Shown: piece after piece, positions 1,262 to 43,384 of the stretch
How the letters are laid out: each line of letters begins with the position of its first letter
Numbering within the stretch: position 1 is the first letter of the stretch
NCBI GenBank assembly: GCA_051294905.1
Contig: CM119374.1
Location: 5,580,001 to 5,644,000 of the forward strand
From: Botryllus schlosseri
Taxonomy: Eukaryota
Direction of reading: 5' to 3'
Length of the DNA: 64,000 nt
Position numbers and translations under genes: made by a program
Notes under the pieces: model-generated
What the model was told of the DNA's origin: nothing
Databases searched by the model: none
What the model saw: only the letters and a program-made list of their open reading frames with translations

Positions 1262-1350
1262 CTGGACGGCCGTTCGGATCGCGACCGTGCACTCTTGGAG
1301 GTGTGTGGGAAACACCTACGTGGCTTTCCGAATGTGATATAAGTATAATG
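1262..1350 (+). CDS. aGPCR exon, HormR-like half domain (GRPFGSRPCTLGGVWETPTWLSECDISIM)
   Basis: R-x-C..G-x-W..P....C pattern; donor ATG|gtacgt; a 65-bp phase-0 intron follows. The acceptor (gaag|) is weak, so the 5' boundary is uncertain. Confidence 0.6.
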
Positions 1351-19300: not shown

Positions 19301-22300
19301 CATATTGGCTCGAACATGTCACTGATTGGTCGCCGGACGGATGTACTGTTAGCGATGAAAGCACAAACGGGTCGCTGATCTGCACTTGTAACCATCTCAC
19401 TAACTTCGCATCTCTTTTTGTAAGTAGCTTTAGCTTTGTTCAGGTATTGGATAGTAATAGAAGCCAATTATTTCTATCATGCATTGGAAAATAGACACAA
19501 TAATCCAGGGGCGTCAAACATACAACCCGCAGGCCGCATTTGGCCCGCGAAGCTATTCAGTGTAAATTGAAAAATTATGTATCATCCATTGCATTTCTTC
19601 ACGGCTTAAAGAGAAACGCGTAATGCAATTTCATCATATAATATAAAGCCTGGTGATAAAGTATTCCAGTGATAAACAAGGATATGGCCTTCGACAAGAT
19701 AGCATGTTGGAATCATTTGATTGGTGCGACTCGCGAGGGATGTACAGAGTTTAATCCGACCCTCGGCCCAAGTGGATTTTGACACCCCTGCATTATTTCT
19801 ATTATTGTAGTGTATAAATATCTTCACTTGTTTCATGTTTTGTCATGTAATTTGAAACAATTTTCTCGCCGTTGGTATGCATGGGACAGCTTAAAGCAGT
19901 GGTTCCCAACGTGGGCGATATCGCCCCCCAGGGGGCGATTTGTCGTTCCAGGGGGGCGAAAATAGCCAAGGGGCGATAGGGGGGCGATGGCACGTTGAAA
20001 TGGCTATATTGGCGTCCATGACCGTGACTTCCACACCCAAACCCCCAATTGGACTGGGGGGCCTGAGCTCGATGGGGGCCCACAATTTCTTCATGAATTA
20101 ACAATAATTATAGATTATAATTTTGGAAATTTAGGCAACTTTTTCAAAAAAAATTCGCGCTGTGCGCCATTTCTTCGTCGCGCATTTCTTGCTTATTGGA
20201 TACCCTTCTTCCAAGAAATATTAAGAATCAGTTATAGAAATAGGCATCTCGGCGTCAGCCATTGTCACCCCATGACGCACCAAGACATATGAAGTTTCAG
20301 GCCATGTAACATGCAACTACGAGAAGTGTGCCAGAACGAGAAAACCTTGGCGGAAAAGGGCTGCCTTTATACTGACCGACTTCGATATATATACGATATA
20401 CGTATATATTTAATCGTCCATAGGCGCCTAAATGGCTGTCGCCAAATGTTCCTGTCCTGGCAATCAGAACCCCACAAAAAATGCCATCTCGCAGAGAAAA
20501 ATTATTTGCTAGTGCAGAAATATCAATTTGAAATCATATGCGTCTTTTAGTTCAGTACGTATGGGCAATTTGAATATCTTTTGACATAGCAGACACGAAA
20601 TGTCATTACATACCCATGGGTTCGCCCGAATCTGTTCAATTATTACGTAGGGGCCCTACATTTCCAAGACGCCTCACTTAGCTTTACCGGTAAATCTGAA
20701 TACATGAGCAGAGAGAGGATAAAAAATTGACAGCAATATATATGCAATTCCCGATCATATTGACCGATTTAATCATGAATGATTGAAAATTGAGAAGTGG
20801 CGGTAAAAAGGTATCGGGGAAATTGGGTCTGAGCGCTGCAAAAGTTTGCTTTATCGCCCTATGTAGGGGGGGCAAGACCAACGTATTGGGATGGGGGTTG
20901 GCTGACGAAGTGCTGTTACGGGCCTTTTGGAACCAAGTCGGAGAAATCACCTTTTTTGTTAGTCAACTCACCAAATTTAGCTGGAAAAGTGTAATTTCGA
21001 GGTCGAGCCGAAAAGTTGACCTTTTTTCTTAGTCTACTCGCCGGTGATTTCAGTCTGTATGCCCATTTTTTGGTTCCCAATATTTGGGGGCCGATGATCG
21101 GTGTGGAGTGTTAAAAGGGGGCGATGAGCCGAAAAGGTTGGGAACCACTGGCTTAAAGGAAGTAAAACCTTCCACAGGACACCACTTCCGTCGTTACCTC
21201 GATATATGCTCTGGACATAATCACCAGCGTCGGTTGCTCGATATCATCAGTGGCCCTGATAGCCGTTATATTCATATACACCTTCTGCGCACCGTGAGTA
21301 GTACTTTCAGTGGTTTTCAGTAGAGAAGTACATCTAATTTTCAAATACTTCAAGCGTATTTTTCCATTAGTTCTCCAAGTGGTTATCATTTTAGAATAAT
21401 TTCACTTCGTCAAATTTCCACTTTTTTAGCAAAAAAGTAGCCCTACCATAAATACTTTTTGCTTGCTTGCTAATCGCTGCTTGTATCTCCACTTGTGTAG
21501 AAATGTGTGGCTTCGCTTCTACTTGTGTTGACAGTGTGGCTACTTGCACCAGCTCTGGTGATTTTGAAATCATTCATTTCAAAGATTTTGTAATGGGCCA
21601 CTAGTCCGCTTTACTTACCTTCAGCAAATCAACGTTACTAAGGCTTGCACTGCGTAAACGAGCGGATAGCGTCCATATTCGATTAGTATCAATCAATCCA
21701 AAAGAGTTTTTGTACTAATAATTCAGTAGTTCCCTCACTGGGCGATTTATGAAAAGGCGAGGAAAACACTAAAGGGGTTTGTTTGTAGTATGGTATTCAT
21801 GGTGTATGTCGACTGCTATGGTCATGTACGTCAGGCTGCCGACTTGTAGCATGGCCCACTTCTAGGCTTTTTATAAGTCACCGCTTACACGGATGATATG
21901 GCGTGGAGGAGCCTATATAAACCTCCAACACTTGGGTAGGATTTCTGGATTCGACCACGGTCGGACTTCGACCCACAACCCATTGGTGTTGTAGTTGTGG
22001 ATTATACCAGTGCGCTATCTCGCCACAAACCAAAGGGGTGATGGGGGGCGAAATTGTTCGAACGTCCAGTGAGGTAAATTTAATTACCACGACTAAAATA
22101 CACGTGAAGACGGCTTATTCTGCATATGATCCTACATTTGACTAAAAACAAGGGCCAATCAAACTGTAAGTAGTCGCGGAAACCGGTTTTCTGAGCACAG
22201 TCTCGGAAAAATGATTTTTTTTCAGTCAATTCAACAGCGATCAGAGTTGCGTTAATTAATTTCCCCTTAATGTGCACTTTTTTACGGATCCGTAAATCAG

Positions 22301-25300: not shown

Positions 25301-28300
25301 CGCAAGCACGTTCAAACAAATCTTTTTTTAGTGGTAAGCAGGGAGCCACCAGTGTTAGAAGCCTGCGCAAGGGGGCCACGGGAAATAAAAGGTTGGGAAC
25401 CACTGTCTAGGCCGAGGTGGATGTTAGAGTAAAGGATCGGTACTGATGCGTGTCGTTCGTCATCCTCCTATCTGTTCATGACGTCGCATTGTGTCTTATC
25501 GCGTGTTATGTTACAGCTTACGTTATCGCAAACTAGTATAGTAAAGTAATTAAATCGCAAAATGTGTATTCCTGTTTTCTGTTCTTACCTTAACCAAACC
25601 ACTTGTTTTATTATAATGGAATTGGAATTTAGCTTATATAGTTCTCAAACATTGGCGCAGGTTCGAGTTGTATCATATCAACTTGTCAATGGGTACTGTA
25701 TCGCATGTTATCAATTCATTTCTCTGTTCTCAATTTTGGCTGGTAACTATAAACTGATGATTTGCAAGTACTCAGGTACTTTAGCGTGTGTATATTTAAC
25801 TCTCTATTCGTTCATCGGTTCAAAATCATTGACCACTCAGACTCAATCTGTATTTCATACATCTAGCAAAATGCAATGACGTTATCATGCCTCATACTTC
25901 GAAAACGCAACTTGTCTTGAATTGTGACTTGAATTGAATTCACTTGACTCGACTTGACTCGAGTCACCTCCAAAAATCGAGAGACTTGACTTGACTCGAG
26001 TCACCTTCGAAAATCGATTGACTTGACTTGACTCGAGTCAAAATGTGCAATGACTCGAAATGACTCGTATCTCGAAGGTAGTGACTTGATCCCAACACTG
26101 CCGTAAATGTGGCGGGTGAAAATTCTTGTCGAGCTCGATAAGCGTACGATGAAGCGAAAAAGGTGGGGAACCACAGTAATAATTGAATTCCATCACTGAC
26201 AATCCTACAATTGCTTTTCGGGCCTTCGAATACATTCCGCATGTCTTCAGAGACGATCTCCTGTATATATGTGACCTTCCTAAGTAATGAAATATTATCT
26301 GTCAAGACACAAAATGGTAACGCATAAACAGCATTTAATGCGATTTTGACTCATACTATCATTGCATATACTACTATTGCTTTTTCAGCTTTACTTCTAA
26401 CCGATCCTGATCTTATACTATCAGGTTATCATGGCGAGGTGAAAGATATCACGCGTCGTTCCTCCTCGTGTCTCTGTCGGTTTCACTACTGGGAATGAAT
26501 ATCACTCTACTTGTGAGTCAACTACCCGCTCTATCTGACCCTGCTGTAACGGACGTCGACTCTGCTTCCTGTATAACGATTGCTATGCTTCTACATCTCT
26601 TCATGCTGTCATCTTGCGCTTGGATGAACTGCGATGCAGTGGTTTTGGGAATTGACGTCGTGAAGGTTCGTATTATATCGGCTGCAGTTTAAATAAGCTG
26701 TTTCATATACCTTATGAAATCTGGTAAATTTTGATACATACATATAACAGAAGCCTTAGCATGATATTTGTTGTTAAGCTCCTGATAAATATGATATCGC
26801 GACAAAACTCTGAACAAGGAAACTTTGTTGAATTAAAATAGTCAAATAGTGCAAGGCAATATATTCTTCTAAGTCGGCATCGATTGCTTATATCTTGGAC
26901 ATAATGATTACACAATACTATAGCAATGTTTGTTTTACCTTAAACGGAATATTACGACCAAAAAAATCAAAATTTGGAAATTATTTTACCTTAAAAAACT
27001 GTATTTTAACAAATTTTTACCTCGTATATGTAAATTAGATGTTTTCCCACATAATGTTAGCTTTGTACTACTGATCTACCTTTTTCTGATATGTACTATC
27101 TGTCATTACGAAGTAGTGTGGCCTGAAAAAAACTGTTTGACTTAGAAACTGACAAACTTTCACAAGAAAAACTTTATTTTAAAGAAATCTTTGCCTATGA
27201 AGAATTCCAGGAGTTATATCACGCATTATGGTCGAAATAATTAAAGAAAAATTGTAGAGAAAGATACTTTCCTACATTCTCGGGTAGAAAGTTTCTGTTC
27301 TTTCTAAATTGCTCGCCAAGCATGAAGAAATAACGTTCAACAGCAGCAGTTATTGGCTGACAACACTGAAGTTGTGCAATGAGCATACACTGCTGATGGT
27401 AAACCGTGTTACTTCATGCTGACAATGTTGTCTACATTACAATTTTTCATCATGCGGTCCTTCATATGAAAACCAATGCGCTCGAAGTTTTGCTTCAGTT
27501 AGGAATTTGCGGTACGTTGAGTATAACAACATGTCAACCTATTTGTTTCATTTGACCGTATATGATTCACAACAAAGGTGGTCAGTAACGAATTACTTCT
27601 ACTTTTGGGCTGTACTAAAGTAGTTTTCCGCTACTTCTGGTACTTACTCCGGTAGATCTGATTTTCTCTACCTCTACATCTACTTCGTAAAATTTTGTGA
27701 TCAACTTACTAACTTTTCGTTATTTCCAGTTTGTCAAGTAGAGTAGTTTAATCCCCCAATAAGAAAGATAGCCTGTGGAATTTCGGGGCTGTTTTCACGG
27801 AGTACCAACATTTAACATTCTTAAAAGTCAAGTAAAGTACAGAAATTTTGTTGGGCTTCACCCACAGTGGTTATGGGGTGACAAATATGTTTTGACGCAA
27901 GTATCAGTGAATATAATTGTGGTACCTAATTGCTTGGCTCCGCTCACACCGCATTGTCGCCCATATCGAATATTTCATCACAGTAAATATGGCCCACCAC
28001 AATGTTTGAAACTACTGTTTCGCAATCTAGCAATTACCTATCATATCGTAATCTAGCAGCCCATGACATGTCCAGCTAATCTGAAAAATCCGGCTTTTTG
28101 AACCTTACACCTGTTTTAGCTTACAACCTTTGTAGCTTTGTGGTCAAATGACATGAAATATATTTTCCTTTGTTTGAGAATGGTAGTTGTATTTCACTTT
28201 CAATTCTGATTATCTTACTTTGAGTTCTAATTACTTTCAGATCTTTTGTCTGCAGAACATACATGTTGAAGCATAAAAGCAAGTGTACTAATGCCTCTAT

Positions 28301-31300
28301 TTTCCGAAAATAAAGCTACACTAAATATAAATTTTACGATCCATAATATTTGTTAACGTATACTAATCGCGAAAGTGTTGAAACCGTATCCGATACAACT
28401 CATCCGTATTGCTCTTCGTCTAAACTTAGGTCCTTATAATATTGAAGAGGGCACCATGCCATGATGTTCTCTAAAACGGGGTCTTCTATTAAACAAAGGG
28501 TGGGTATCGCATTTTCATATCGATACTATAATTTGCATCCCATGATCCAAAACAATGCTTATTCTATCGGCGATTGATACCTCCGAGGATGCATCAATAT
28601 TATTCAAGCTCTCTGCACCTTCCGCATAACTCAAATTGCAGCTGTTGACAGTCCATACGAAAGAATCAAGACTGTTTTCAAAGCTACTTACATACTTGAG
28701 TAGATTTGAAGTCAGTCAATTCTACTTCTACTGTAAGTAGTTTTAGGTGGCTTATGAAAGAAGTACTTCTACTCGTACTTGAGTGGATTTTATCGTCGCT
28801 ACTTCTACTTTTGCTTGAGTAGCTTTATTGACTACTTTGACCACCTCTGCGTCACAATGAGCGGACAATGAGCCGTCTACAACTGTAGGCCTATAAAGTA
28901 GGGTACAAGCTGTAAAATGTGAAATGATAACTTCACCGAAATTGTGTGCAAACATCTACGATACATACGAAATGCAGGTCGCAAAAAAGTTTGGGCCTAA
29001 CGCTAATTTTTTTTGGCCTAACACTTTGACTTATTTTGACATGTAAAAAAAAGTATGACCATTTGGTAAATTTTGGGCAATTCCAATGCTTCCAACTTCT
29101 GATTACGACTGCGCCTATAGGTGTGGTACATCGACTCTTAGAATGAATGTACGCCTACTTCATATAATATTTGTATATTTGCTTTCAGCCGTTTTACAGC
29201 AAAAATAACGTCGAGAGCAAGCGGTTGCTTCTTTGGTCGATATTATGGGCAGTCGTTATGCCTCTACTGTTTGTGGGGATATCAGCAGCAGTTAATACCG
29301 ATAACTACGTGTATGGACATGATCCCGAAACAGATAACTCGGTAACGTGAGTATCTTATTGTGGTTAGCATACGTCAGTGGTCGGGAACCTTTTTGGTCT
29401 GAAGAGCCATGCCAGCTCTATATTTTCCATTATAACTCTCAAAGAGCCATACATTTCAATCAATTGTTACGTCACAATTGAAAATTCGGTACGTTATGGT
29501 GGTACTAATTCGAACTCGAAACGGCCCGTGGACATATGAGCATGCGACATTTCAGAATGCGAGACTTCAGCATGCGACAATTTGGCATGCGACACATGAG
29601 CATGTGGGTTAAATTACGGGTTAGGGGTAGGTTAGGGTTGGATTTATGGTTGGGTTAGGGTTAGGCTTTAGGTTAGGTTAGGCTAGGTTAGGTTAGGTTA
29701 GGCTATGTTTCGGGTTAGGGTAAGTTTTTGGGTTATACAGTCACATGCTGAAGTGACGCATGCTGATGTGTTCCATACTGAACTGTCGTTTTCCATTGTG
29801 TCGCATGCTCATATGTCGGGCAACCCTCGAAACATGGGATTCGTCGTGGCCACCATGTTTTCTCTGTAAAACTCGTAACGCAATTCATCGTAAATAGCTC
29901 AGAATTTATAATATCTGATATTAATCTAATACAGGGCGGCCAACCCTTGGCCCGCGGGCCAAATGTGGCCAGCGATGTAATTCTCGAAATTAGATATAAC
30001 ATCAGGTAAAATTGCAAGGCCAACCAAAAATTGATTAGCCTAACCGCGAAAATTGATGATGACTAAAACATCAGATCCGACGGTCCAGACACATTTATCG
30101 CCGGAGATTTACTTAACTTGAATTTTTTCTTAGCACTTCACATTATTTGTTGTCACTAGAATTCTTGCATTTAGTATTTGATCCCCCTTTTTAAAATTAT
30201 AAATACGTGTGATTTACAGAATTGAGTCCATTTATATTCGTAATTAGGAGATAACGTGTCGTCAAACACATGAGACTTCGCTTGTGCGCTCGCAGCGAGA
30301 TCGTCGGCGATAAAGCATTTGCACAAAATGATAGAGTCATGTTCATCGAAACCTTCGATATTGCTGTGTCTAAACGCCGAATAATCAAGCCCTTGCCAAA
30401 TAAGCCCAGTGGGAGGCGACCCCCAATATATGGAAACAACATTTTTATTGATCGAATTCATTCACTATACCTTTGAATAAGTTCGCGATTCTGGCGACCA
30501 GGACATGAATCCACACTGCACAGTTGAACACAGAGTTTTCGTGACATATTTGTTATCTATTTTTAAGCGTAGTAATATAAGACTTGTATTCAACTTTCCT
30601 TAATTCGGTTCGCTACTATCGGAAGACTAAGAAAGGTCATCAACATTCAAGTAGCGCACGCAATGGTTCGTACATCTCATGCGGCACTTTGGCCGGAAAG
30701 GTTGGCCACCCTTGATCTAGCTAGTAAAACTAAAGCACTGTTTCCGAAAATCTAAATATTGATCGATTTCTTAATTCGGCGGTAACATAAATGTTGCGCA
30801 ACAGGCCTACATTTTATCGGCAGTACTAGAAATATCCTTATGAATTTGGACGCGGATAGCGAGGTGATACTTGTAATTTGAATGTGTAATTGGAATGTCC
30901 TTTCCAAGGCAGTTCATTTCTCGGCGTAAATCAGGAAGACAAGGGGTATTTGAAAACTATAGTCATAGGCGTCCCCATGTCTGCTATTCTCATGATCAAC
31001 CAACGTATGGTGCAATCTAAGATTACGCAGCGCTCGATGTCTGGTACATCGAATTCGCGAGGGATATTCGTTGCTGGCGCTACAGCAACTTACATTTGAA
31101 GATTTTGTAGAGGAGTCCGAGCCCTTAAACCTGGATACGCCACTGCCTTAACCTCTTAAATACATGTTTAGCTGCAAAGAGAATAAATATTTCGGCCATT
31201 AAGACAACTTACTATCAGGTTGCTGCAATTTCGATAAAAAGTACAAATTTAAAAATATGTGAAAGAGCCATATCTTATACGCAAAAGAGTCATATATGGC

Positions 31301-34300
31301 TCGCGAGCCATAGCTCCCGACCACTGGCATACATAGATCATGCTACATTATATGAAATCAAGCGAACCGTGCTGTGTCGATTGTTAATTGTAATCGTAAC
31401 TGAAACAAACTAAGGTTGGACTTCGTTGGTCAAGATCACTTCGGATCGTACACACAAATAATGAAAAACCCTTCAGCCATATCAATATTTACCAGCATCT
31501 ATAAACCAAATTGAATGTACTCGACAATATTTGATTGACATGAATACCATCTTAACTTTCTCATCATTGCCTCCATTCCAATCGCTAACCCTTGCTACGC
31601 AGAGACGCACATTTCGTAATGGCGTATATTGAAATTCGTAAAAACTCGTTCGAATCCAATATATACTGCTCAACGTGTAATCAACATACTCACAAGCTTG
31701 TTTGTGAAATGAAGATGGTATGGTGGGTCTTAAGCTTGAGTCATAGCAGATAAGATTTCTGTTTATATTTACTACCACAAAAATGAAAATAATAACTCTG
31801 CTGTTTCCTTTATGTACCTATTTCCATCGGTATGGGCCAAACCTATTGTAAATAAATATGACTTTCAAGATAGAGAATTATATTTTACGAATATATTTTC
31901 AGATGCTGGATGGATCCGGAAAAAGTATTGTATCTCGCCATAATACCGACGGCATTGATGATATTCTTCAACCTTGCTGTGTATATTGTGCTGACTTATT
32001 ATTTGTGCACGACAAAGGAATCTGAACACGTAAGTCTGTATTTTAAACATTGTGAAGGATTCCTTATTTCAACTGGTGGTGAATATATAATTTCAGGGAA
32101 CGTATTGGAAGAGTACCCGACAATCACAAAAGAGGAGACTTTTGACTAATTTTACGATCGTTTTCAACCTGGGTGTATCTTTGGTGTTCGGATTCCTCAT
32201 GGTGGCTGCCAGAAACGAAAATACTTTTATAGCGTTCGCTTATATATTAACCATATCCACATCCTTGCAAGGTAAGGAACAACGTGTTTCTCAGCAAATT
32301 ATCAGTAGCTAATATCAGAAACTTGCACGCACATGGTCCCACGGATTGCTATAATACAGGTCTACGTCGTAACGAATGCATTTCCCCGGAACGTATGCGA
32401 TATGATTACTGTCCAATTTTAATTACATAATAGATATTATTATAAGATGAACTGAATATCTAATTAGCAATGGCTTAATGACAGACTTATATTCAAGCCA
32501 AATTACACACATTGAAGCATCTTCGTCTAAAACAGGGGTTCTCAACGTAGGGGGCGCGCCCCCCTCGGGGGACGCGGGAGGCTATCAGGGGGGGGGGCGA
32601 GAAATTGACGAAGTCAGTATAGGGGGGCGCGAGAAATTGACGAAGTCAGTATAAATTGTACGTGTCTGAACATGTGTTTCACATCCATTATGAGAAGACG
32701 ATTAATGAAGATGAAATTTATTCCATATTTAAGAAAGCTTGCAAAATACAAACTCTAGCAACCGCGCTCAACGGAGAATAGTCTGATTTCAACTTCATTT
32801 GAGCAAATTTTTGAAATTCTTTGGAGATATAGAGAGCAATTCCCACGTGTAAGTCATTCATTGCTTCATAGCTTTGACAGTAGCCTAAAGCTTGTCGCGC
32901 TGGGCAGCTCTTGTTAGTAGCTTGCGAACTGCACTGCCGAAGACAGACTTAGATGCAACATAGGTTGCCCGGTTTCGCCCTCAATTAGGCTATAAATCAA
33001 CACAATTTAATTAATTTCCAAAACTGATCAAATTTAGCCAGGCAGGACAGAACGACGCCTTGCTCTCTGTACTCACTACCAGCATCAGGATTAGTCTTGT
33101 TCAATGTTTTTTTGTTATTTTCAAACAAGTTTGGAGAAATTTGTCAGACTCAACAACTGGAATGCAGATTCAAAATTGGCGTAAGATATACCTTATGTAT
33201 ATTATTAGATCAGGGGTGGGCAGCCTGCGGCCGTAGAAGGGAATTTGAGCGGCCGTCGACGCCTAATTCAATTAGTATGTGTTGGCGGCCGTAGACATGC
33301 AAATTGCAATTACGAATTCACTCCCGCATTTTCGAGAGATATTAATTAATCTTGAAATTTCTTCGCCCTCCGCGCAATTCAATAAGACTTCATTTTTCGA
33401 TTTTAATGCAGTAGCGCCCTTCTTAATCTGAGCCGGCAAGAAATAACAACGTTCGCGGCCCTGAAAAATTTTCGCGCTCAGCGCGACAATATGCACCTCC
33501 CGGCAACTATCCATAACATTGCCACTCGCGATTTCGGTGCGTACAATAGGCCATTGTGAAAAGCAGAATAGTCCGGAGTTCACCGGGAATGGATATGGAC
33601 ACTGGACAGTTTACCATAGGAATTTTGCATCCAGATCGTTCATTGCGGCCATGCCCTGGAATGCGGCCTTACGCTACATAAGCAATCGAAATGCGGCCAT
33701 GATTATCAAAAACGTTGCCCACCTCTGTATTAGATGATGTGCTCTCTTTGACATGACGATAAATGCAAGGGGGGTCAGGGGGCGCGATTTTTTTCACCAC
33801 CTCCAAGGGGGGCGCGTGTCAAAAAAGGTTGAGAACCACTGGTCTAAAAGTCGGAAAGTCGACTCGACAATCGACACGGCCCGCGAAAGGCTCGAGTAAC
33901 GTTTTAAAAATATTGATAAAATGCGTACTGAAAATCTAATTACTGCAGGAACCCGAATAAAAATTCCGTATTATATTTCAACACGATGATTATATGTTGT
34001 ATTCATATATTTAGCATTATTTCATTGCTGACTCGATAGTCCGACCTCACCCTTTCAACTGCTAAATATCACAGAAAGTCAAAACGGGAATGACTTCCAG
34101 ATCACGGGTGTAATTTTACATTGTCCACTCCAGCAAGTTCATTAGTTTCAGTACTGTACTTGGAGAAACCGATTCGCGCGAGTGATAGGTAGATTCGTTC
34201 TCTATATGTTCAAAAGTATTTATATTTATAAAATCTATGTATTTTAGTGGGAGCGCATTTTAAGCTAACGTGGTTATGACGCTGCCAGCTTTGTGTGTCC

Positions 34301-36034
34301 TGGAGTCGAAGCAAAAGTAGAATCAACAAAGCTGTTTACAGATTACTGCTCACAGATTCAAATCACCATCCTGTTCTAAGAATCGGGACAACAAACCTTC
34401 CTCCCTAGTTTTGAAAATTGGTTATTGAGTGTGACCAGCTCAAGAGGTTGACTCTCCACTGTTTCTGACGCGTGTATAATATCATCAAATCAATGGTTGG
34501 TTTGTTATAAATAAGCATATATTATGTCCATATCCTCAGTACATAATCAAATACCAATATTGCATTTTGGTTTACAATCCGAATTATATATATACAGTGC
34601 GGTCCGCAAATTAATTAAGATGTTGAATGAAGCCGCGAGCAAGATGTTTGTCTAGCACCCCTGCTGTAACCGATGCCGAACGTAGCACTTGACCACTTAA
34701 TTCTACCCAACAAGTAATAAATGTCTCTATATCATCTTCTCAATGACCTCTTTTAACAGGTCTTTTCATTCTCATTATAACTGTTTTACGAAACGATGAT
34801 GTGGGAAACTCAATATCAGGCAGATTTAGTTCTGTGACTGACAGAGTCGCCAGGGACCCAAGTCAATATTATGCTGAAACGATCCGAAACGCTAATAGGT
34901 AAGTCAACAAATTAATATGCAGTTTCGAATCCATCCTATCCAAATATTCTGGTACAATTTGCTGGTAAAAACTCGAAGAACGCATAGTAGTTTCTCTTTT
35001 AAGATCACCATACATTGTAATTCATTCGCATACACTTGCTCTGTGGGCCAATAACCTGCTTTTACAGTAAGTTGAAACGATAGTAAAATATCACTTAGAA
35101 ATATCAAGTCATATTTTTCGTTATCAAATCGCAAGTTATGTCATTGGTAATTCTACAACATCAGACTTCACATCGACTCTAATACTATAACCTCAATACC
35201 AGTTTAGTGTCGAAGTACAACACAAACCAACTCCGTGATGTTGAATTATTAGGTACAACCTACCTGGTATCTTGAGGTTCCACGGTGACACTTGTATCCG
35301 AACAGTATCCACGCTTCGTTTATATTCAATAAAAGGATGAATCAGTTCTGAAGGCAATGTCTGGCTTATACGGTCCTTTCAAGATAATGTCTTATAGGCG
35401 CAGATTTATTCTCGTTATTTAGATCGTAGATCGATGTCGATCGGTAAATATAGGGGTGAACGCCAAATTTCAAATGTCAATTAATAATGATATACAAAAA
35501 AATGAAACAAGCTTACCCTATGGCTGCGATAACCGCAAGGCTTGACGTAGTTAACCATCGGCAATTATGTTTAAAGTGACGCTAAGTATTTAGCGGATAC
35601 AAATAAGCATGGCAAATTCATGTTTTGCGTGAAGGTTATCTTAGCGTCGCATGTGGTAATTGTCGAAATGATTTACGATGGCCATGGTCCCTCCGTGCGT
35701 GTTACTCCTTTAATTGCTTTAAACATGAGTGGCTTTCATTTACTGCAATTATCTAAATTCCATCACCTACCCACGGCACATCAATAACAAAGTACAAGGA
35801 AGGTATGGAGACTAAACCTAACGTATTCTGGTTTTCAATTAAACCCTATGCTTTTCTTCTTTTTGAGAAATTAGTGTACTCATGGTGGTGATATCACGGT
35901 GTTATATGCTCCCTTTCCTTGTTCGTTACAGTGCATATTCCAACCCGACTTTCACTGGCCCCAACAATCCTTACACGGGAGAAACAGAGGATGAACACTA
36001 TTACTACTCGATCGACGACTGGGGAGACCGTTGA
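1262..36034 (+). CDS. Adhesion GPCR (family B2/aGPCR), 5'-partial; join(1262-1350,1416-1574,7652-7728,12278-12417,14886-15050,15760-15956,19261-19419,21178-21293,26425-26665,29189-29346,31903-32029,32097-32271,34760-34898,35932-36034)
   Basis: Exons found by eye, each with AG/GT boundaries and matching intron phases, giving one open frame. It contains GAIN motifs (ASMFIP..; WIVVYRNSILF), the GPS (CAYW..WSPDGC..CTCNHLTNFASLF), seven hydrophobic segments with aGPCR signatures (GCSIS; LLHLFMLSSCAWM; CWM in ECL2; SLQG) and a stop at 36032-36034. The first exon's acceptor is uncertain. The N-terminus is presumably upstream of the window. Confidence 0.92.
1416..1574 (+). CDS. aGPCR exon, GAIN-A helices (EIATEDITDENREETSSNLEILTSEPEELNEEDIDATTEVIVEV...)
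   Basis: ttttag| acceptor, |gtaaat donor, 53 codons, phase 0/0. Confidence 0.88.
2369..4041. mobile_element. Non-autonomous hAT (TIR CAGGGGTGGCCAACCT) with nested inserts
   Basis: Perfect 16-bp TIRs; perfect 8-bp TSD ATCTAGCC (2361-2368/4042-4049). Confidence 0.9.
3321..3595. repeat. 42-bp minisatellite (about 6.5 units, AATTAGATTAGAATTAGAATTCGAGCATAAGAACAATTCAC-like) inside a TTAGAA-rich element (about 2725-3675)
   Basis: Direct reading of the tandem units; a related element lies at about 60730-62200. Confidence 0.85.
5643..6254. mobile_element. hAT-type MITE (TIR CAGTGGCGGCT)
   Basis: TIR pair; TSD CCAAAGGC/CCAAAGAC (1 mismatch). Confidence 0.8.
6616..6798. mobile_element. Short MITE (termini AATGTTC...GAACATTG, CTGCGCA repeats)
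   Basis: 8-bp duplication CACCTCAC; the homologous site in the sibling copy near 20670 is empty. Confidence 0.75.
7652..7728 (+). CDS. aGPCR exon (VADSVVTTISNLMESPSIEDYSDSS)
   Basis: tttacag| and |gtaagt; phase 0/2; V..TISNL GAIN-A motif. Confidence 0.88.
8444..11631 (-). mobile_element. DNA transposon, Kolobok(H)/Mutator-like, with transposase ORF
   Basis: TIR GGGGGAGGGTACTGCT(A/G)GACTC at both ends; TTAA directly outside the right end only; encloses the 592-aa transposase. Confidence 0.85.
9442..11220 (-). CDS. DDE transposase, Mutator-like/Kolobok-H-type (592 aa)
   Basis: Motifs SYDGTWQKRGH, C.KNHEGSSGAME, ISDGDSS, EECINHVNKRM, H..C....C and TQNANECLH; no internal stops. The start is an alternative codon in the ORF track. 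Confidence 0.88.
   Translation of the reverse strand: MLIVVLIMRTKITTKKAFGNRKRKCYNRGKVPVVPKKSFEKRLDLLSPSTSGSGGSDSAETFFLASFAFFDSVVQKIVNCPDCGSTDKGYWNCIQHKGFATQIIIGVSCCKKEIFRQYTSEMKDIVELDGKNHSHHQINTRAVFSALQNSMHLAKLNSFTEMMGIEKGISKKSFEKISALIYNRTKSTLKDSIDSSRQSVKNIYDQSDENGLTNISVSYDGTWQKRGHVSKYGIGFVIEPSTGFVLDYEVKSKYSRVCDTNEKRYKDEALKKWREEHEPVCYKNHEGSSGAMERDIAKILWHRSAEIGFRYTTMISDGDSSVMAMLKESKPYGSIAVVKEECINHVNKRMYTRLTKVVQTEKLKKHKMGGVGKLSIPRIKKWSQYYHNAIVNSAPDAKEASKKVWAILLHNCSTPEKPTHGYCDEAWCFYKKAKREGASDPIPLPKSKYHPLTPQMFQAVKPVFQDLASLDLLSRCMKLQTQNANECLHSTLWKRCSKDSFCGKDYMEFVVALAVIRWNNGAKGLFNVCNSAGVPMSPRVKDTASRDDAIRIKRSHTQADTTRERKRKRLDDLSKDRESERHEGTTYSAGKF
12278..12417 (+). CDS. aGPCR exon (LIVQLDTVAEKVELSSNSSATRSIRNTDMVST...)
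   Basis: tgtgcag| and |gtgagt; phase 2/1. Confidence 0.85.
12828..14130 (+). mobile_element. Non-autonomous hAT-like element (termini CAGGGCCGTAAC...GTTACGGTGCTG), family A
   Basis: Perfect TSD TGTTTATG; imperfect TIRs; internally duplicated unit; siblings at about 6255-7280, 20017-20927 and 55945-57209. Confidence 0.88.
14886..15050 (+). CDS. aGPCR exon (KTGFGVAVLRRPD...RVQASMFIPGEAAAK)
   Basis: gttag| and |gtgacc; phase 1/1; AS-x-x-IP GAIN-B motif. Confidence 0.85.
15760..15956 (+). CDS. aGPCR exon (SRSWIVVYRNSILF...ILSANV...ENITFS)
   Basis: atttcag| and |gtaagc; phase 1/0; Y....LF and ILSA motifs. Confidence 0.9.
19261..19419 (+). CDS. aGPCR GPS exon (PVCAYWLEHVTDWSPDGCTV...ICTCNHLTNFASLF)
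   Basis: tttttccag| and |gtaagt; phase 0/0; canonical GPS with HL|T autoproteolysis site. Confidence 0.96.
19506..19790. mobile_element. hAT MITE (CAGGGGCGTCAAA...TTTGACACCCCTG)
   Basis: TIR pair; TSD degraded (CAATAATC/CATTATTT). Confidence 0.65.
19897..21150. mobile_element. Non-autonomous Buster hAT (TIR CAGTGGTTCCCAAC) with a nested family-A copy
   Basis: TIR identical to the autonomous element; perfect TSD GCTTAAAG. Confidence 0.92.
20017..20927 (-). mobile_element. Family-A element, reverse orientation, nested
   Basis: Reverse-complement similarity to 12828-14130, including both terminal motifs. Confidence 0.75.
21178..21293 (+). CDS. aGPCR TM1 exon (DTTSVVTSIYALDIITSVGCSISSVALIAVIFIYTFCA)
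   Basis: ccacag| and |gtgagt; phase 0/2; AL..IT..GC.IS motif. Confidence 0.93.
21770..22025 (-). mobile_element. Putative tRNA-derived SINE
   Basis: Minus strand shows an A-box-like TAGCGCACTGG and B-box-like GGGTCGAAGTCC; body motifs shared with about 43015-43145 and 61765-61900. Confidence 0.5.
22807..25405 (+). mobile_element. Full-length, apparently autonomous Buster-type hAT transposon
   Basis: Perfect 15-bp TIR CAGTGGTTCCCAACC; flanks share TCTAGGC (near-perfect 8-bp TA-core TSD); single intact ORF. Confidence 0.93.
23443..25212 (+). CDS. hAT Buster-family transposase (ZBED5/FAM200/SCAND3-like), 589 aa
   Basis: BED finger (CMHC..KLRNH....HP), LQLDESTD, CTDGAPAM, CSLH, VRWLSRG and dimerisation-domain TTYLCESGFS; full DDE triad. 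Confidence 0.95.
   Translation: MPKVRKWKESYVTFGFTKVLRDCLECAQCMHCSYVMSNASLRPSKLRNHHDKNHPRRNDIGNDALAAKRVRFDREATLNHFGFLPEEKPALQCSYEVAYRIARCKKPHTIAEDLIKPCAEKMVELLIGPAEKKKIQKIPLSNNTIRRRIDDMAVNVCQQVCSEIKQSKIQASLQLDESTDCALENHLIAFARYEKEGKIKEEFLFCNTMPGTTTAVDVKTIVNSFFDANGLGWQNFKHICTDGAPAMVGVKGGFVTLVKKEWPHVTSSHCSLHRYALASKTLPSSMMKVMDDAVKVINFIRARAKNHRLFQILTKEMGAEHVRLLFYTNVRWLSRGKCLSRLYELRVEVEIFLRENKNNLHAHFQNDEFVMILAYLADVFGCFNEMNLSLQGRDVTVGDVQDKLAGICARIGVWGERIKVRSTFSFPLLSQYLEIKKVELPVGIQTCISEHLRVVSAEFESYFPEKRVHNPWYKDPFNTEIDPIEEEAEELAELQVSNALKLVFENREDFASFWMSLYDSYPLLSKKASVLLVQFATTYLCESGFSDLATIKTKSRNRLDVGSDIRLAVSKTEPNIKSLVRRSQEQISH
26425..26665 (+). CDS. aGPCR TM2-TM3 exon (LSWRGERYHASFLLVSLSVSLLGM...CITIAMLLHLFMLSSCAWMNCDAVVLGIDVVK)
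   Basis: tatcag| and |gttcgt; phase 2/0. Confidence 0.92.
29189..29346 (+). CDS. aGPCR TM4-ECL2 exon (PFYSKNNVESKRLLLWSILWAVVMPLLFVGISAAVNTDNYVYG...)
   Basis: tttcag| and |gtgagt; phase 0/2; W..P motif. Confidence 0.92.
29376..31326. mobile_element. Composite non-autonomous hAT (TIR CAGTGGTCGGGA)
   Basis: TIR pair; TSD GCATACGT/GCATACAT; contains the 29523-29825 MITE and another insert at about 29932-30714. Confidence 0.85.
29523..29825. mobile_element. MITE with a telomere-like (TTAGG/TTAGGG)n core
   Basis: 19-bp perfect inverted repeat GACATATGAGCATGCGACA (29531-29549/29799-29817); GG...CC termini; 8-bp TSD CTCGAAAC. Confidence 0.8.
31903..32029 (+). CDS. aGPCR TM5 exon (CWMDPEKVLYLAIIPTALMIFFNLAVYIVL...)
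   Basis: ttttcag| and |gtaagt; phase 2/0; CW and P......N motifs. Confidence 0.93.
32097..32271 (+). CDS. aGPCR TM6-TM7 exon (RRLLTNFTIVFNLGVSLVFGF...AFAYILTISTSLQ)
   Basis: 67-bp intron, then tttcag| and |gtaagg; phase 0/1. Confidence 0.93.
32533..33841. mobile_element. Non-autonomous Buster-like hAT (CAG(G/T)GGTTCTCAAC)
   Basis: Perfect TSD GTCTAAAA; GGGGGCGCG subterminal repeats. Confidence 0.9.
33211..33727. mobile_element. Nested hAT MITE (CAGGGGTGGGCA...TGCCCACCTCTG)
   Basis: Perfect TSD TATTAGAT; related to the right arm of 2369-4041. Confidence 0.88.
34760..34898 (+). CDS. aGPCR TM7 end/helix 8/tail exon (GLFILIITVLRNDDVG...SQYYAETIRNAN)
   Basis: ttaacag| and |gtaagt; phase 1/2; completes SLQG.FI. 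Confidence 0.92.
35932..36034 (+). CDS. aGPCR probable terminal coding exon (AYSNPTFTGPNNPYTGETEDEHYYYSIDDWGDR*)
   Basis: Long pyrimidine tract ending gttacag|; phase 2 matches the previous exon; ends in TGA. Confidence 0.75.
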
Positions 36035-38337
36035 CCTTCCAGTTAATCAGCAAAAACACTTCTATCAAACTGCACGTACCTTCTCGTATATTCTAGTATA
36101 CCGCATAGATGTTTACTGATTTTCTCTTGTATATATTCCATATTTTAAAATCGTTAATTTTTCTGTTCGACTCCGTTCAGTATTGGAAATAATCCACAGT
36201 TGGTCAATAAGCTATTTTTTATATATATACTTGTGTTTCTATTCGTTGACCGAAAAAATATTACAAACAGCAGTGTATGACATCATGTGGCATATAGGCT
36301 GAACTGTATATAGTCCAGGACTAGATAGAGATAATAGTGACGTCTGCCCAAAGTTATTTCCCAAGAGCTTTAAAATTGATTAGAAATCACACCAACAGTT
36401 GGCATAGACTGTAGTAGAAAGTATTAGGTCAAACGTTAGTTCAATTGCATTGATGCGGTTATGATTGGATAAAAAGCATAACACACGAATATGCATTTTA
36501 TACAACGATTCCGTCATGACCTGTATTTTGCGTACTACATTCACCCAGTCTTTATGTTTATTGTGAAATTTGTATTCCGAATGTGAATTATCTGCGACGA
36601 TAAGATACATCTCTCTCTTCTCCAAAGCAAGTGAGTTTTTCGGAGGATAATATCGGTTCAACCAGCCTAAGACCATTATTTGCTGTTTTCCTGCTTCTTC
36701 CGGAACTTTGGTTGTGTTGGGCAATTGGTTGGCCACCCCTAATCTAGTGGTCAGCCTTGATGAAATCCTTCTGATCTTTAACAGTTTAAAATATCTTATG
36801 ATAAAATACACACTGAGTTTATTTCGTGGAATGAAGATGTAATCCGCTGCAGCTGTGGTTCTCAAACTGTGGGACACCTCTTTTGGGGTCGTGAAAGCAT
36901 CTAAAGGGGGCGCCACAATAAAGAGCAACCGAATGCATGTAATAGTTAGCTGATGCTGTTTATGGCCAGTCTGTCACGCATCTGTGCAGAGTGAGCAGAA
37001 AACCGAAAGTTATGGAGAAATAAGATATTTCCATATAAAATTATGCCAGAGTGTAACCAAGTCAAAATGCTCCGAGTCACAAGTCAATCTCGCTTTTATA
37101 GTTTTGAATAAGTCGAGTCAGTTTCAATTCACCGCCGAGTCAAGTCCAAGTCACGGAGAAGAGTGTCGAGCATGAGCCATAATGTTTTGATATGAGTCCG
37201 AGTCCAAGTCATTGTGTTGACTGTTCAGTTCCGAGTTAATGTGAAACCCACTTTTTAAACTCTGCTCGGTGATATCGAATGATATGCATTCATAATATAA
37301 TGATCTTCCTCACTGTTAACAGTTTCTGGTAGCAATTTCAAGTACCAGTATTTATAAACGAAATAATAAAAGTGTGTTTACTTTGCCATTCTTCGAAATT
37401 ACAATGAAATGACTGCTTTGCTAGACACAATCTCGAGTCATATGACTTGTTACTCGAGTACAAATCGATTCAATGCACAAATTGACTCGAGTCAAGACGA
37501 GTCATTTTTTATACTTTTAAGAAAATGAATCGAGTCAAGTCGAGTCACCAGAGAATCGTTACTCCAGTCATGACTTATGACTTGAGTCATTACAGCCATA
37601 TGCCAGATAAAATAATATGCTTTATGAATCAAAGAATCAAGGATTCGAACTGAAGTAACTTACAACGTAGCTACTCCGAGCATACTCGATTAGGACACAT
37701 TTCCTAGAATGCCACTCTGAAGAAGCGCATTTCATAGCAGCCCAAGAAGTAATCAATTGAATTCTTCTCTTACCGAACACATGCGAGCCGTAGAGAAAAA
37801 TGTTTGTCCCTCGTTTCGTCCCAAGTTTGAAGGCCGTGCGTCCCGCACCATTGGTGATTGTTTTAACTTGTGGTCAGGTACGTTGAAGCGAAGCGAAGTA
37901 GAGGGGATTAGACATCAATATCGTTAAAATATCTTTATGCGCTACGTGCTACCATTGTATATAATTATTATTGACAAACTATTCTACTGAAATCTGCGCT
38001 ACTCAGAATTATTTACCTCCAGCTCGGAATTAGTGCATCTTGTATAGTCCGAATGACACATGTGAGACGTCTCGCGACAGTTCGAACTTTTCATGCTATA
38101 AACTAGCGTCGGGATTGCGAATATTACGGTTGCTCTTATAAATATTTTATGGGATATTGCGATAAGGGGACGTGAAATTGTTCACTGTCATCAATGGGGG
38201 ATATGGAAATAGGTTTGAGAACCGCTGCGCTACAGCAATGCCGTGGCTCTCCAGCGAGACCGAATGAACCGGGTCCAAGTTTCGGGCAGGTAGGTTCAAT
38301 TTTCATTTTGAAATATCGTTTTGAGATTTTCCAAGAA

Positions 38338-40280: not shown

Positions 40281-40506
40281 AGTATAGAAATTAAACATGG
40301 AACGGCAACGACCGATTTTGCATCTTCGTTCCGCTTCGCCGAGGCTGGAGTGGAGAATTGTTTTGCGTAAGCGACTGTAGGATTTCTGGCAATCCAAAAG
40401 CTATCTTCCCGAGCGCTGAAATTACTGAATCTGGTCTTGATCGAAAGCTACTGTTGTACCGATTCCGAAAATATAAATTAAAACAATGATCAGGCACTGA
40501 TCCACC
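40281..40506 (+). repeat. About 226-bp dispersed repeat (second copy 5929-6154) with a 3' hairpin GATCAG-GCA-CTGATC
   Basis: Near-identical copies read directly. Confidence 0.85.
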
Positions 40507-42083: not shown

Positions 42084-42526
42084 ACACTAGTATCAGTTCA
42101 ATAACATTTACATCATTTCAAAACACCGCAAATCGAGGGGTCACCACCAGGTTAACTGTTCAAAAGATTCGGTGTCCTAAACATATAAGCAGGGTTGCCA
42201 TACCGTCCTTACTTCTAGGATTTGTCCTTATTTTGAAAGGCCAGGTCTTAGAAAACTCAACTGACCTTATTTTTAAGAAATGTCCTTATTTTCGACTTGC
42301 GTCCTTATTTTCAACAACTACAGAACTTCGATTTTTTCCCTATGTTATCTGTGTTGCACAATATTTTAAAATAATGATTTTACGGGGAGATTTAATGACA
42401 TCAGAAATGAAAAGAACGCCCGGCGTGTGCACACCACAGGATTTGACTTATAAGTGGTGAGATCATAGTGTCCCAAACGGTGTGGACAGAGCGAGATTGA
42501 ACGGCTCACTGCATTTGGGTTTGCAT

Positions 42527-43384
42527 CAGGGGCGGGCAACTTCTCCAGTCGGCGGGCCGGATATAGGAAAATTAAGTACTTGGCGGGCCGGATTGCTCAA
42601 TCGATACATTATTACCCCATTTATCCACATATACAAGGTGTAAATCGTATTTAATGAATGTATTTTACCGACTGCAATGTCACTTCAAAGCTATTTCTCG
42701 CCAATAATGACGAAGACAATGTGGATTTGAGAACAGCATTGTCATGCAGGCGCCGCCATGTCTGCTTCTCTCCGATCAATCAACACACGCTGCAATCACT
42801 AATTAAGATTTCAAGGCGTTCGATAAGGCCGATACCTCAAATATACGGATATAATATATCCGATATATCAATTCATTAGGGCTGAGTAGGTGACGAGATA
42901 GGGTCGTTGTTCAACTGTGTGGCATATTTTATCTCGATATTGAATTCATGCTGACCGCGGCTTCTACGACAATTAAAAAGTGGCGCGCGACCCATTTTGA
43001 GTAGGCGACCCCGGGCATAAGCGGTGTCTTACAAAATCCTAGAACTGTGCCGTGCTACATGTCGGCGGCCACGGAATCAAAAATAAGAAATATCGGCCTG
43101 GTGTAAATGACCATTGCAGTCGACAAACACCATGATTACCACAAACGATATTAGGGTTGACTACATCGTAAATGCCGATAATGCAAGTCTTCCCGCTTCG
43201 ACGAACTTAGCGTAAGCTCCACTATCGCACGCTGCGCAGTGCGCATACATGTATATAATAACTTACAGTCACTAAAATTAGACGTAGTAAGCAAGTAGCG
43301 GGGAATCTCGCCAGACTGTAGCCGCGGGCCGCATTATCATATAAGACGGAAAACTGTCCGCGGGCCGTATGTTGTCCGCCCCTG
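42527..43384 (+). mobile_element. hAT MITE (TIR CAGGGGCGGGCAAC)
   Basis: TSD GTTTGCAT/GTTTACAT; sibling at 61300-62128. Confidence 0.88.

What the first reader, a model, noticed from the sequence alone, without database searches (positions are those of the whole stretch)
34760..36034. Adhesion GPCR with a tyrosine-motif cytoplasmic tail (hemITAM-like and NPxF motifs)
The roughly 70-aa predicted tail has 7 tyrosines: SQYYAETI, AYSNPTF, NNPY and EDEHYYYSI. An acidic run followed by YxxI resembles the hemITAM of CLEC-2/Dectin-1, and NPTF resembles a PTB-binding NPxF motif. It ends WGDR, with no class-I PDZ motif of the kind many vertebrate aGPCRs carry. Inference: this receptor may signal through Src/Syk or SH2/PTB adaptors, as immune receptors do. 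That would be unusual for an aGPCR.
Basis: partly seen in the sequence, partly recalled or inferred. Interest (0 to 1): 0.7.

Follow-up and report, generated by a model that had tools for sequence, protein, structure and literature searches.

The report
Tyrosine-rich tail of tunicate adhesion GPCR
These are the last two coding exons of a real, expressed sea-squirt adhesion GPCR with an unusually tyrosine-rich tail, but only a small Asn-Pro-Tyr motif recurs in relatives, so the immune-receptor-like (hemITAM) reading is not supported.

Summary
Exons 34760-34898 and 35932-36034 (+) encode the end of TM7 and a 70-aa tail with 7 Tyr. The tail contains SQYYAETI, AYSNPTF, NNPY and EDEHYYYSI and ends WGDR. 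Transcript contigs from two studies and raw RNA reads from a third show the GT..AG junction 34898>35932.

The gene is an adhesion GPCR, with a GPS motif (HLT|NF), 7tm_2 pieces and a GPR128-type GAIN subdomain A. It belongs to a tunicate-specific ADGRG-like clade. The closest protein is Styela clava "ADGRG7-like", about 50% identical and colinear.

At 10.4% Tyr, the tail is richer in Tyr than all 139 other aGPCR tails sampled.

Two homologues keep the last intron at the same place and phase: Styela and a compact tunicate contig, L002. Against them:
- Only an NP-aromatic motif (NPY) is shared by all three (shuffle p about 0.005).
- An acidic-Tyr site is shared with L002 and possibly Styela.
- YxxI, the full [FY]xNPx[YF] motif and SQYYAETI occur only in the window sequence.
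- No single register meets the hemITAM definition.

Most likely this is a disordered tail carrying sorting or adaptor-docking motifs. Syk/SH2 signalling remains a low-probability speculation. Overall it is a new member of a known kind, of modest interest.

The parts
34760..34898 (+). Penultimate coding exon: C-terminal half of TM7 (LFILIITVL) and the proximal tail, including SQYYAETI at 34861-34884.
   Evidence: AG/GT flanks and frame. RNA coverage and junctions on both sides. X7 allele SNPs: 34804 G>A (Gly>Arg), 34851 (synonymous), 34873 G>T (Ala>Ser).
34899..35931 (+). Last intron, 1033 nt, GT..AG, phase 2 (split codon AG|T = Ser).
   Evidence: Joint seen in X1, X3 and X7. The same intron place and phase occur in the Styela clava locus L003 (AG|G) and in L002 (GG|G).
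35932..36034 (+). Last coding exon: distal tail from AYSNPTF to WGDR, then stop TGA at 36032-36034.
35936..35974 (+). Two NP-aromatic motifs, YSNPTF and NNPY. This is the only tail element shared with the Styela and L002 last exons, where it reads [GE]NPY.
   Evidence: The MAFFT alignment makes N-P-Y invariant. NPY is the only 3-mer common to the three last exons; 0.5% of shuffles give any common 3-mer.
35987..36013 (+). Acidic Tyr cluster EDEHYYYSI, the 'hemITAM-like' element, which also contains the YxxPhi match YYSI.
   Evidence: It aligns with ENEAYEFDA of L002. A similar TEN[VE]GY lies at the C-end of Styela, but positional homology is uncertain.
36035..36220 (+). 3' UTR, extent approximate. 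Variant poly(A) signals AATAAT at 36188 and AATAAG at 36206.
   Evidence: X7 read depth continues to about 36219. Signals listed.
19261..19419 (+). GPS exon with the autoproteolysis site CNHLT|NFASLF.
   Evidence: Pfam GPS 1.8e-13. Boundaries.
21178..21293 (+). Stachel/linker and TM1 exon.
   Evidence: tblastn with Styela P0002. Weak 7tm_2 match. Splice sites and frame.
26425..26665 (+). TM2-TM3 exon.
   Evidence: Pfam 7tm_2 7.3e-07..
29189..29346 (+). TM4 exon.
31903..32029 (+). TM5 exon.
32097..32271 (+). TM6 and first half of TM7. The exon ends SLQ plus the first base of the Gly codon that 34760-34761 completes.
   Evidence: It is joined to 34760 in the X1 transcript contig.
1264..16001 (+). 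Upstream GAIN-region exons of the same gene. Boundaries are approximate and come from HSPs: 1264-1347, 1437-1577, 7652-7741, 14891-15040, and one exon within 15618-16001. The N-terminal part lies upstream of the window.
   Evidence: Colinear tblastn hits of Styela P0002 at about 50% identity. Pfam GPR128_GAIN_subdomA 1.8e-05 on ORF 1416-1637.

Best explanation
The region holds the last two coding exons of an expressed adhesion GPCR. The gene belongs to a tunicate-specific ADGRG-like clade, and its closest relative is Styela clava 'ADGRG7-like'.

Shown:
- The receptor has a cleavable GPS site (HLT|NF) with a Stachel, and seven TM helices.
- Its tail is 70 aa long, acidic (12 Asp/Glu against 6 Lys/Arg) and exceptionally Tyr-rich.
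- The last intron is conserved in place and phase in three tunicate lineages.

Inferred:
- The tail is a disordered platform of short linear motifs.
- The motif under constraint is an NP-aromatic signal early in the last exon. It is NPY in all three lineages. In this species it is doubled, and one copy is a full [FY]xNPx[YF] match, YSNPTF.
- A less certain second element is an acidic Tyr site, E-[DN]-E-x-Y.
- The most likely job is docking of PTB-domain clathrin adaptors of the Dab/Numb/ARH/Ced-6 type. AP-2 may also bind the YxxPhi match YYSI. Together these would control endocytosis and sorting of the receptor.
- Primary signalling probably runs through the tethered agonist and G proteins, as in other ADGRG receptors.
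- The hemITAM-like look of EDEHYYYSI is a species-specific near-miss, probably produced by local TAT/TAC codon repetition.
For: - Family: Pfam GPS, 7tm_2 and GPR128_GAIN_subdomA. A 405-aa spliced ORF runs from the GPS exon to the stop, with AG/GT at every junction.
- Relatives: colinear match of about 50% identity to Styela P0002. The tunicate clade has 100/100 support, with the window sequence next to the Styela genes. The closest solved structures, searched with the Styela orthologue as proxy, are ADGRG6 and ADGRG2.
- Expression: RNA junctions in three studies.
- Tail comparison: the last intron has the same phase in Styela and L002.
- NPY sits 41-49 residues after TM7 in all three lineages and is invariant in the MAFFT alignment. 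It is the only 3-mer shared by the three last exons, with shuffle p = 0.005.
- Smith-Waterman scores for the whole tail against L002 and Styela give p of about 0.03 and 0.05.
- YSNPTF matches the PTB-apo pattern.
- PTB adaptors read FxNPxY and also variant NP signals such as FQNPLA (PMC3338440; PMC2845073).
- Composition is an outlier among 139 aGPCR tails.
Against: - Only three lineages could be compared.
- Over whole tails the shared 3-mer test gives only p = 0.05. Pairwise similarity of the last exon alone is not significant.
- The full [FY]xNPx[YF] motif and the YxxPhi match occur only in this species; Styela has NPYS and L002 has NPYV.
- Ciona P0140 and the Clavelina paralogues lack NPY.
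- NPY is not a canonical PTB, EH or SH2 ligand.
- Two of three SNPs in the penultimate exon change the amino acid, which fits weak constraint on the proximal tail.
- No disorder prediction, binding data or trafficking data exist.
Confidence: 0.45

Rival explanations
1. The Tyr motifs have no specific function. The tail is a fast-evolving, weakly constrained disordered segment. Its Tyr richness comes from local codon repetition (TAT TAC TAC, and a duplicated NP-x-aromatic-TG unit). The shared NPY is chance or a relic.
For: - Tail identity to the closest orthologue is about 16%.
- Similarity of the last exon alone is not significant.
- The shared 3-mer test over whole tails gives p = 0.05.
- Two non-synonymous SNPs lie in the proximal tail.
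- Clavelina and Ciona relatives have unrelated tails.
- YxxPhi occurs in 35% of aGPCR tails by chance.
Against: - NPY lies at a similar distance from TM7 and early in the homologous last exon in three lineages.
- The shared 3-mer test on the last exons gives p = 0.005.
- NPY and NPx[YF] are rare in other aGPCR tails, at 0.7% and 2%.
- No read or contig differed from the window in the last exon, although depth was low.
Confidence: 0.3
2. One reading: the tail is a phosphotyrosine signalling platform. Src-family kinases phosphorylate the acidic Tyr cluster and the YxN/NPxF sites. Syk-type tandem SH2, Grb2-type SH2 or Shc-type PTB adaptors then dock, so the aGPCR signals like an immunoreceptor or like Draper/CED-1.
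For: - Seven Tyr in 70 aa is the highest fraction among 140 tails.
- An acidic context precedes Tyr (EDEHY), and similar ENEAY (L002) and ENEGY (Styela P0136) sites exist.
- YSN in the window sequence and YEN in L002 fit the pYxN Grb2-SH2 pattern.
- Acidic residues upstream of Tyr promote hemITAM phosphorylation (PMC3576117).
- Tunicates use ITAM/Syk-type signalling in allorecognition according to PMC12582321 and PMC12065747; these papers were only listed and were not read.
Against: - No register of EDEHYYYSI meets the hemITAM definition.
- YxxI/L is absent in Styela and L002.
- There is no ITAM, ITIM or ITSM.
- hemITAMs sit in N-terminal tails of type II C-type lectins.
- The 2026 aGPCR consortium review does not mention ITAM, SH2, PTB or tyrosine phosphorylation in the 300,000 of 412,533 characters held; Src appears once, in a reference title.
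- There is no expression evidence for blood or immune cells.
Confidence: 0.12
3. The tail recruits ELMO/DOCK/Rac, as shown for mammalian ADGRG7/GPR128 and BAI1, through a helical ELMO-binding segment.
For: The GPR128 tail is of similar length (aa 717-785). It binds ELMO RAE through aa 750-778, with Tyr760 and Arg772 needed (PMC6318265). The gene here carries a GPR128-type GAIN subdomain A.
Against: The matching stretch here is rich in Pro and Gly (SNPTFTGPNNPYTG), which makes a helix unlikely. A PDB sequence search with both tail exons found nothing relevant, and no BAI1 fragment. No vertebrate ADGRG7 sequence was in hand, so the motif itself was not aligned.
Confidence: 0.05

Closest known systems
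Styela clava 'adhesion G-protein coupled receptor G7-like' (XP_039264691 = P0002; locus L003)
   Same: It is colinear at about 50% identity through the GAIN, GPS and 7TM regions. It is the nearest neighbour in the tree. The last intron has the same place and phase, and the tail carries an NPY motif 41 residues after TM7.
   Different: The Styela tail is basic, with 14 Lys/Arg, and has 3 Tyr. It has no YxxI, no [FY]xNPx[YF] and no YYY run, and it ends GYSVSC. Overall tail identity is about 16%.
Vertebrate ADGRG family (ADGRG6/G2 solved structures; ADGRG7/GPR128)
   Same: GPS plus 7tm_2, and a GPR128-type GAIN subdomain A. With the Styela orthologue as the query, the best PDB matches are ADGRG6 (3e-38) and ADGRG2.
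   Different: The tunicate genes form their own clade, separate from the ADGRG6 and ADGRG2 representatives. One-to-one orthology to ADGRG7 was not tested. The known function of the GPR128 tail is ELMO binding, not a Tyr motif.
hemITAM receptors (CLEC-2, Dectin-1, CLEC9A)
   Same: A triacidic run lies next to a Tyr, and a YxxI lies nearby.
   Different: The definition needs acidic residues at -2, -3 and -4 of a YXXL (PMC3576117), and here the two conditions fall on different tyrosines. Those receptors are type II C-type lectins with N-terminal tails. The element is not conserved in relatives.
[FY]xNPx[YF] sorting/PTB signals of LDLR-family receptors, APP and Draper/CED-1
   Same: YSNPTF fits the pattern. 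Drosophila Draper carries FDNPVY, which binds Ced-6 (PMC3338440). From my own knowledge, not checked here: APP carries YENPTY, and Draper also has an ITAM that binds the Syk-like kinase Shark.
   Different: Those are single-pass receptors. Here the full motif is species-specific, and only NP plus an adjacent aromatic residue is shared. No binding has been tested.

Membership tests
Adhesion GPCR (class B2) | GPS motif with an HL|T-type autoproteolysis site immediately before the 7TM | tested here: met
   Pfam GPS 1.8e-13 on ORF 19225-19491. The sequence reads CNHLT|NFASLF.
Adhesion GPCR (class B2) | Secretin-like 7TM domain (7tm_2) | tested here: met
   7tm_2 matches on four exons cover profile positions 3-27, 33-110, 148-191 and 196-247. 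Only the 26411-26689 piece, at 29.1 bits, passes the gathering score on its own. The 7TM is colinear with that of Styela P0002.
Adhesion GPCR (class B2) | GAIN domain and N-terminal adhesion modules | tested here: inconclusive
   GAIN subdomain A (PF22259, 1.8e-05) and GAIN-B-like exons are present. The N-terminal modules, which are EGF and mucin repeats in Styela, lie upstream of the window.
ADGRG7/GPR128 orthologue | Groups with vertebrate ADGRG7 in a tree; ELMO-binding segment in the tail | not tested
   No vertebrate ADGRG7 sequence was in hand. The tree shows only a tunicate-specific clade apart from ADGRG6 and ADGRG2. PDB searches with the tail exons found nothing.
hemITAM | A single YXXL with acidic residues at -2, -3 and -4 (PMC3576117) | tested here: not met
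   In EDEHYYYSI, the first Tyr has E, D and E at -4, -3 and -2 but Ser at +3. The second Tyr gives YYSI but its acidic run sits at -5 to -3, and +3 is Ile rather than Leu. The strict regular expression finds nothing; only a loosened one does.
hemITAM | Motif conserved in orthologues | tested here: not met
   Styela has YSVS or YSAY and L002 has YEFD at the acidic-Tyr site. No YxxL/I occurs in any compared tail.
hemITAM | Recruits Syk through its tandem SH2 domains after Src-family phosphorylation | not testable with these tools
   This needs phospho-peptide binding or cell assays.
ITAM / ITIM / ITSM | YxxL/I-x6-12-YxxL/I; [ILVS]xYxx[ILV]; TxYxx[IV] | tested here: not met
   No matches in this tail or in the relatives. 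The regular expressions were written from my own knowledge of the motif definitions.
[FY]xNPx[YF] PTB/clathrin-adaptor signal | Sequence match | tested here: met
   AYSNPTFT matches .[^P].NP.[FY]..
[FY]xNPx[YF] PTB/clathrin-adaptor signal | Conserved in orthologues | tested here: inconclusive
   The NP core and an adjacent Tyr are kept (NPYS in Styela, NPYV in L002), but the aromatic residue at +3 and, in Styela, the one at -2 are not. Shared 3-mer test: p = 0.005 on last exons, 0.05 on whole tails.
Class I PDZ ligand | C-terminal [ST]-x-hydrophobic | tested here: not met

The most novel reading that the evidence does not exclude
A chordate adhesion GPCR whose tail is a true phosphotyrosine docking platform. 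It would combine a Grb2-type YxN, a PTB-type [FY]xNPx[YF] and an acidic Tyr cluster phosphorylated by Src or Syk kinases. Tethered-agonist activation would then be coupled directly to SH2/PTB adaptor signalling, in the manner of Draper/CED-1 or immunoreceptors.
Probability: 0.1. Interest if true: 0.65.

Novelty: new member of a known kind. Interest (0 to 1): 0.3.

Why it matters
aGPCR tails are known mainly for PDZ ligands, arrestin/GRK sites and, in BAI and GPR128, ELMO binding. The held text of the 2026 consortium review mentions no tyrosine-motif signalling. A conserved NP-aromatic or acidic-Tyr module in a chordate aGPCR clade would add a trafficking or adaptor route that peptide pull-downs and tail chimeras could test. 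As it stands, the evidence shows an ordinary but compositionally extreme receptor tail with one weakly conserved short motif. The more exciting immune-receptor analogy rests on a motif that fails its own definition and is not conserved.

Tried and rejected
- Paralogues in the window: tblastn of every exon against the window found none.
- The species' own protein or close orthologues: an exhaustive phmmer search with the TM2-3 exon gave 11 hits, the best about 50% identical. A word search with the Styela orthologue and a TM6-TM7-tail profile search for fragments found no closer relative.
- A profile of the four last exons found no candidate at all.
- Two MAFFT alignments that mixed exon fragments with full tails misplaced the last exons and were discarded.
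- PDB sequence searches with both tail exons gave only chance hits: RNase U2, an antibody CDR-H3 and an endopeptidase, all with E above 0.5.
- Invertebrate 'B1-like' proteins in hand have short tails, so they could not serve to fetch the BAI1 ELMO-binding fragment.
- The ELMO-motif test was dropped because no vertebrate ADGRG7 sequence was available.
- A possible alternative or duplicated TM6-7 exon, suggested by the X1 overhang, was rejected. The overhang matches 32240-32269 with 2 mismatches, so it is an allele.
- TE origin of the tail exons was rejected for repeats within this window: self-blastn hits do not touch them.
- A literature search for 'adhesion GPCR' with 'hemITAM' found two papers, neither linking the two by title or abstract.
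- The spliced protein was never submitted as typed letters. As a result, no whole-protein search, fold or disorder prediction of this receptor was run.

Full report
**What is there**

The plus strand between about 1.2 kb and 36 kb of the window carries one large gene with long, repeat-filled introns. The ORF pieces give these Pfam matches:
- GPS: 1.8e-13 on ORF 19225-19491.
- 7tm_2: profile positions 3-27, 33-110, 148-191 and 196-247, spread over four exons.
- GPR128_GAIN_subdomA: 1.8e-05 on ORF 1416-1637.

I placed exon borders from splice sites and reading frame. Joining 19261-19419, 21178-21293, 26425-26665, 29189-29346, 31903-32029, 32097-32271, 34760-34898 and 35932-36034 gives an uninterrupted 405-aa reading frame. 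It runs from the GPS motif (CNHLT|NFASLF) through seven helices to a TGA at 36032-36034, with AG/GT at every junction. The finding's interval is therefore the last two coding exons of an adhesion GPCR.

**Check of the observation**

Read from 34762, the two exons encode the end of TM7 and then 70 cytoplasmic residues with 7 Tyr.

Public RNA data confirm the 34898>35932 junction (GT..AG, 1033 nt skipped):
- A 350-nt contig in run X1 carries it. The contig also carries the end of the previous exon; its overhang matches 32240-32269 with 2 mismatches in 30, so it is an allele.
- A 156-nt contig in X3, from another study, carries it.
- Four raw reads from two start points in X7, from a third study, carry it. 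Their orientation is the one expected for a plus-strand RNA in a stranded library.

No competing junction or loose end appeared at 34898. Coverage continues to about 36219, near the variant poly(A) signals at 36188 and 36206. Expression is low: 14 reads in about 6% of X7, and none in about 13% of X11.

The X7 allele differs at three positions:
- 34804: Gly>Arg.
- 34851: synonymous.
- 34873: Ala>Ser, inside SQYYAETI.

**Is the tail unusual?**

| Measure | This tail | 139 other tails |
|---|---|---|
| Tyr fraction | 10.4% | median 2.7%, maximum 9.6% |
| NPx[YF] | present | 2% |
| NPY | present | 0.7% (one tail) |
| [DE]3-x0-2-Yxx[LI] | present | none |
| YxxPhi | present | 35% |

The composition is a real outlier. 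YxxPhi alone says little.

**Whose gene is it?**

An exhaustive phmmer search with the TM2-3 exon gave only 11 hits. The best full-length hit is Styela clava 'ADGRG7-like' (P0002), followed by other Styela and Clavelina proteins and two Logan contig ORFs. P0002 aligns colinearly with window exons at about 50% identity, from the region before the GAIN domain to TM7.

A maximum-likelihood tree places the window protein in a tunicate-only clade with 100/100 support. It groups with the two Styela genes (92/94) and, weakly, with the G7-like one (81/49). This clade is separate from the vertebrate ADGRG6 and ADGRG2 representatives and from amphioxus, echinoderm and mollusc genes.

With the Styela orthologue as the query, the nearest solved structures are ADGRG6 and ADGRG2. 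Earlier notes of this scan also call the genome a sea squirt. The species' own protein was not found in either protein collection. The N-terminal adhesion modules lie upstream of the window.

**Are the tail motifs conserved?**

Only three lineages could be compared:
- this window;
- Styela clava (proteins P0002 and P0133-P0136, genomic locus L003);
- L002, a compact 6-kb tunicate contig that holds the 3' half of a homologue.

All three have the last intron a few dozen residues after TM7, in phase 2. The split codons are AG|T here, AG|G in Styela and GG|G in L002. The last exons are therefore positionally homologous.

Comparison results:
- MAFFT alignment of the last exons makes N-P-Y invariant.
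- NPY lies 49, 41 and 46 residues after TM7 in the window, Styela and L002 respectively.
- NPY is the only tripeptide common to the three last exons. Only 0.5% of composition-preserving shuffles give any common tripeptide. Over whole tails the figure is 5%.
- Whole-tail Smith-Waterman scores against L002 and Styela give p of about 0.03 and 0.05. The last exon alone is not significant pairwise.

In a gapless alignment from TM7, the first NP of this tail (in YSNPTF) falls on the Styela NP. Which of the two NP motifs here is the homologue is therefore ambiguous. The pair SNPTFTG / NNPYTG looks like a local duplication.

The acidic Tyr site EDEHY aligns with ENEAY in L002. Styela has TEN[VE]GY at its very end, but positional homology there is uncertain.

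Not shared with either relative:
- YxxI: Styela has YSVS or YSAY, and L002 has YEFD.
- The full [FY]xNPx[YF] pattern.
- SQYYAETI.

Ciona P0140 and the Clavelina paralogues lack NPY.

**The hemITAM reading**

PMC3576117 defines the hemITAM as a YXXL with acidic residues at -2, -3 and -4. It shows that the acidic run is needed for phosphorylation.

In EDEHYYYSI the first Tyr has exactly that acidic spacing but Ser at +3. The second Tyr gives YYSI, but with the acidic run one place too far away and Ile in place of Leu. A strict pattern finds nothing, and only a loosened one does.

The other evidence points the same way:
- The element is not conserved in relatives.
- It sits in a C-terminal GPCR tail, not in the N-terminal tail of a type II lectin.
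- No ITAM, ITIM or ITSM is present.

I therefore reject membership. 'Works like' remains untested.

**The NPxF reading**

AYSNPTF fits the PTB-apo pattern. It resembles the LDLR-type FxNPxY signal read by Dab2 and ARH (PMC2845073). It also resembles variant signals such as Yolkless FQNPLA, which Ced-6 reads, and Draper FDNPVY (PMC3338440).

The cross-lineage support covers only NP plus an adjacent Tyr, which is not a canonical ligand. This is the best-supported functional element, but the support is modest.

**Mechanism**

My preferred reading has a confidence of about 0.45. The receptor signals through its tethered agonist and G proteins, like other ADGRG receptors. That part is inferred from family membership.

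The short, acidic, Tyr-rich tail would be a disordered motif platform. Its conserved NP-aromatic signal, and perhaps the acidic Tyr and the YxxPhi match, would recruit PTB-type clathrin adaptors or AP-2 and set the trafficking of the receptor.

Rivals:
- Neutral drift with chance motifs: 0.3.
- ELMO recruitment, as for mammalian GPR128 (PMC6318265): 0.05. The Pro/Gly-rich sequence disfavours it, but it was not formally tested.

**Novelty**

The gene is a new member of a known kind. The held text of the 2026 aGPCR consortium review does not mention ITAM, SH2, PTB or tyrosine phosphorylation. A literature search found no paper that, by title or abstract, links aGPCRs with hemITAMs. A proven Tyr-motif route would therefore be new, but the present evidence does not reach that point.

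**Limits**

- The spliced protein has no reference in the tools, and I did not type it into any call. No whole-protein search, fold or disorder prediction of this receptor was run.
- Only three lineages inform the conservation claim.

Noticed in passing
window 23407-25209 (+): An uninterrupted 601-aa hAT-type transposase ORF (Pfam Dimer_Tnp_hAT 2.5e-06, weak DUF4371). It sits in the intron between the TM1 and TM2-3 exons, on the same strand as the host gene. It may be a young or still active element.
   Followed up: partly
window, e.g. 12915-13757 ~ 56016-56860; 42521-43391 ~ 61294-62135; 5929-6154 ~ 40281-40506 (96%); 13569-14126 ~ 20021-20595 (inverted): Many interspersed repeat copies fill the introns and the flanks (self-blastn). 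None overlaps the two tail exons. A repeat copy ends within about 20 nt of the acceptor of the TM1 exon at 21178.
   Followed up: partly
window 3320-3590: A tandem array with a period of about 42 nt. Self-blastn shows offsets of 42, 84, 126 and 168 nt at 84-88% identity.
   Followed up: no
window 32240-32269 and 34804-34873: Transcript alleles are highly polymorphic. The X1 allele has Leu>Phe, restoring the family-consensus FAYIFT in TM7, plus a synonymous change. The X7 allele has 3 SNPs in 139 nt of the penultimate exon, 2 of them non-synonymous. No read or contig differed from the window in the last exon, but depth was low.
   Followed up: partly
L002:4912-4951: In the compact tunicate homologue, the apparent NPSF just before the last exon is intronic: it lies in the polypyrimidine tract and acceptor. 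ORF listings alone would have suggested a conserved NPxF that is not there.
   Followed up: yes
I did not examine it.
   Followed up: no
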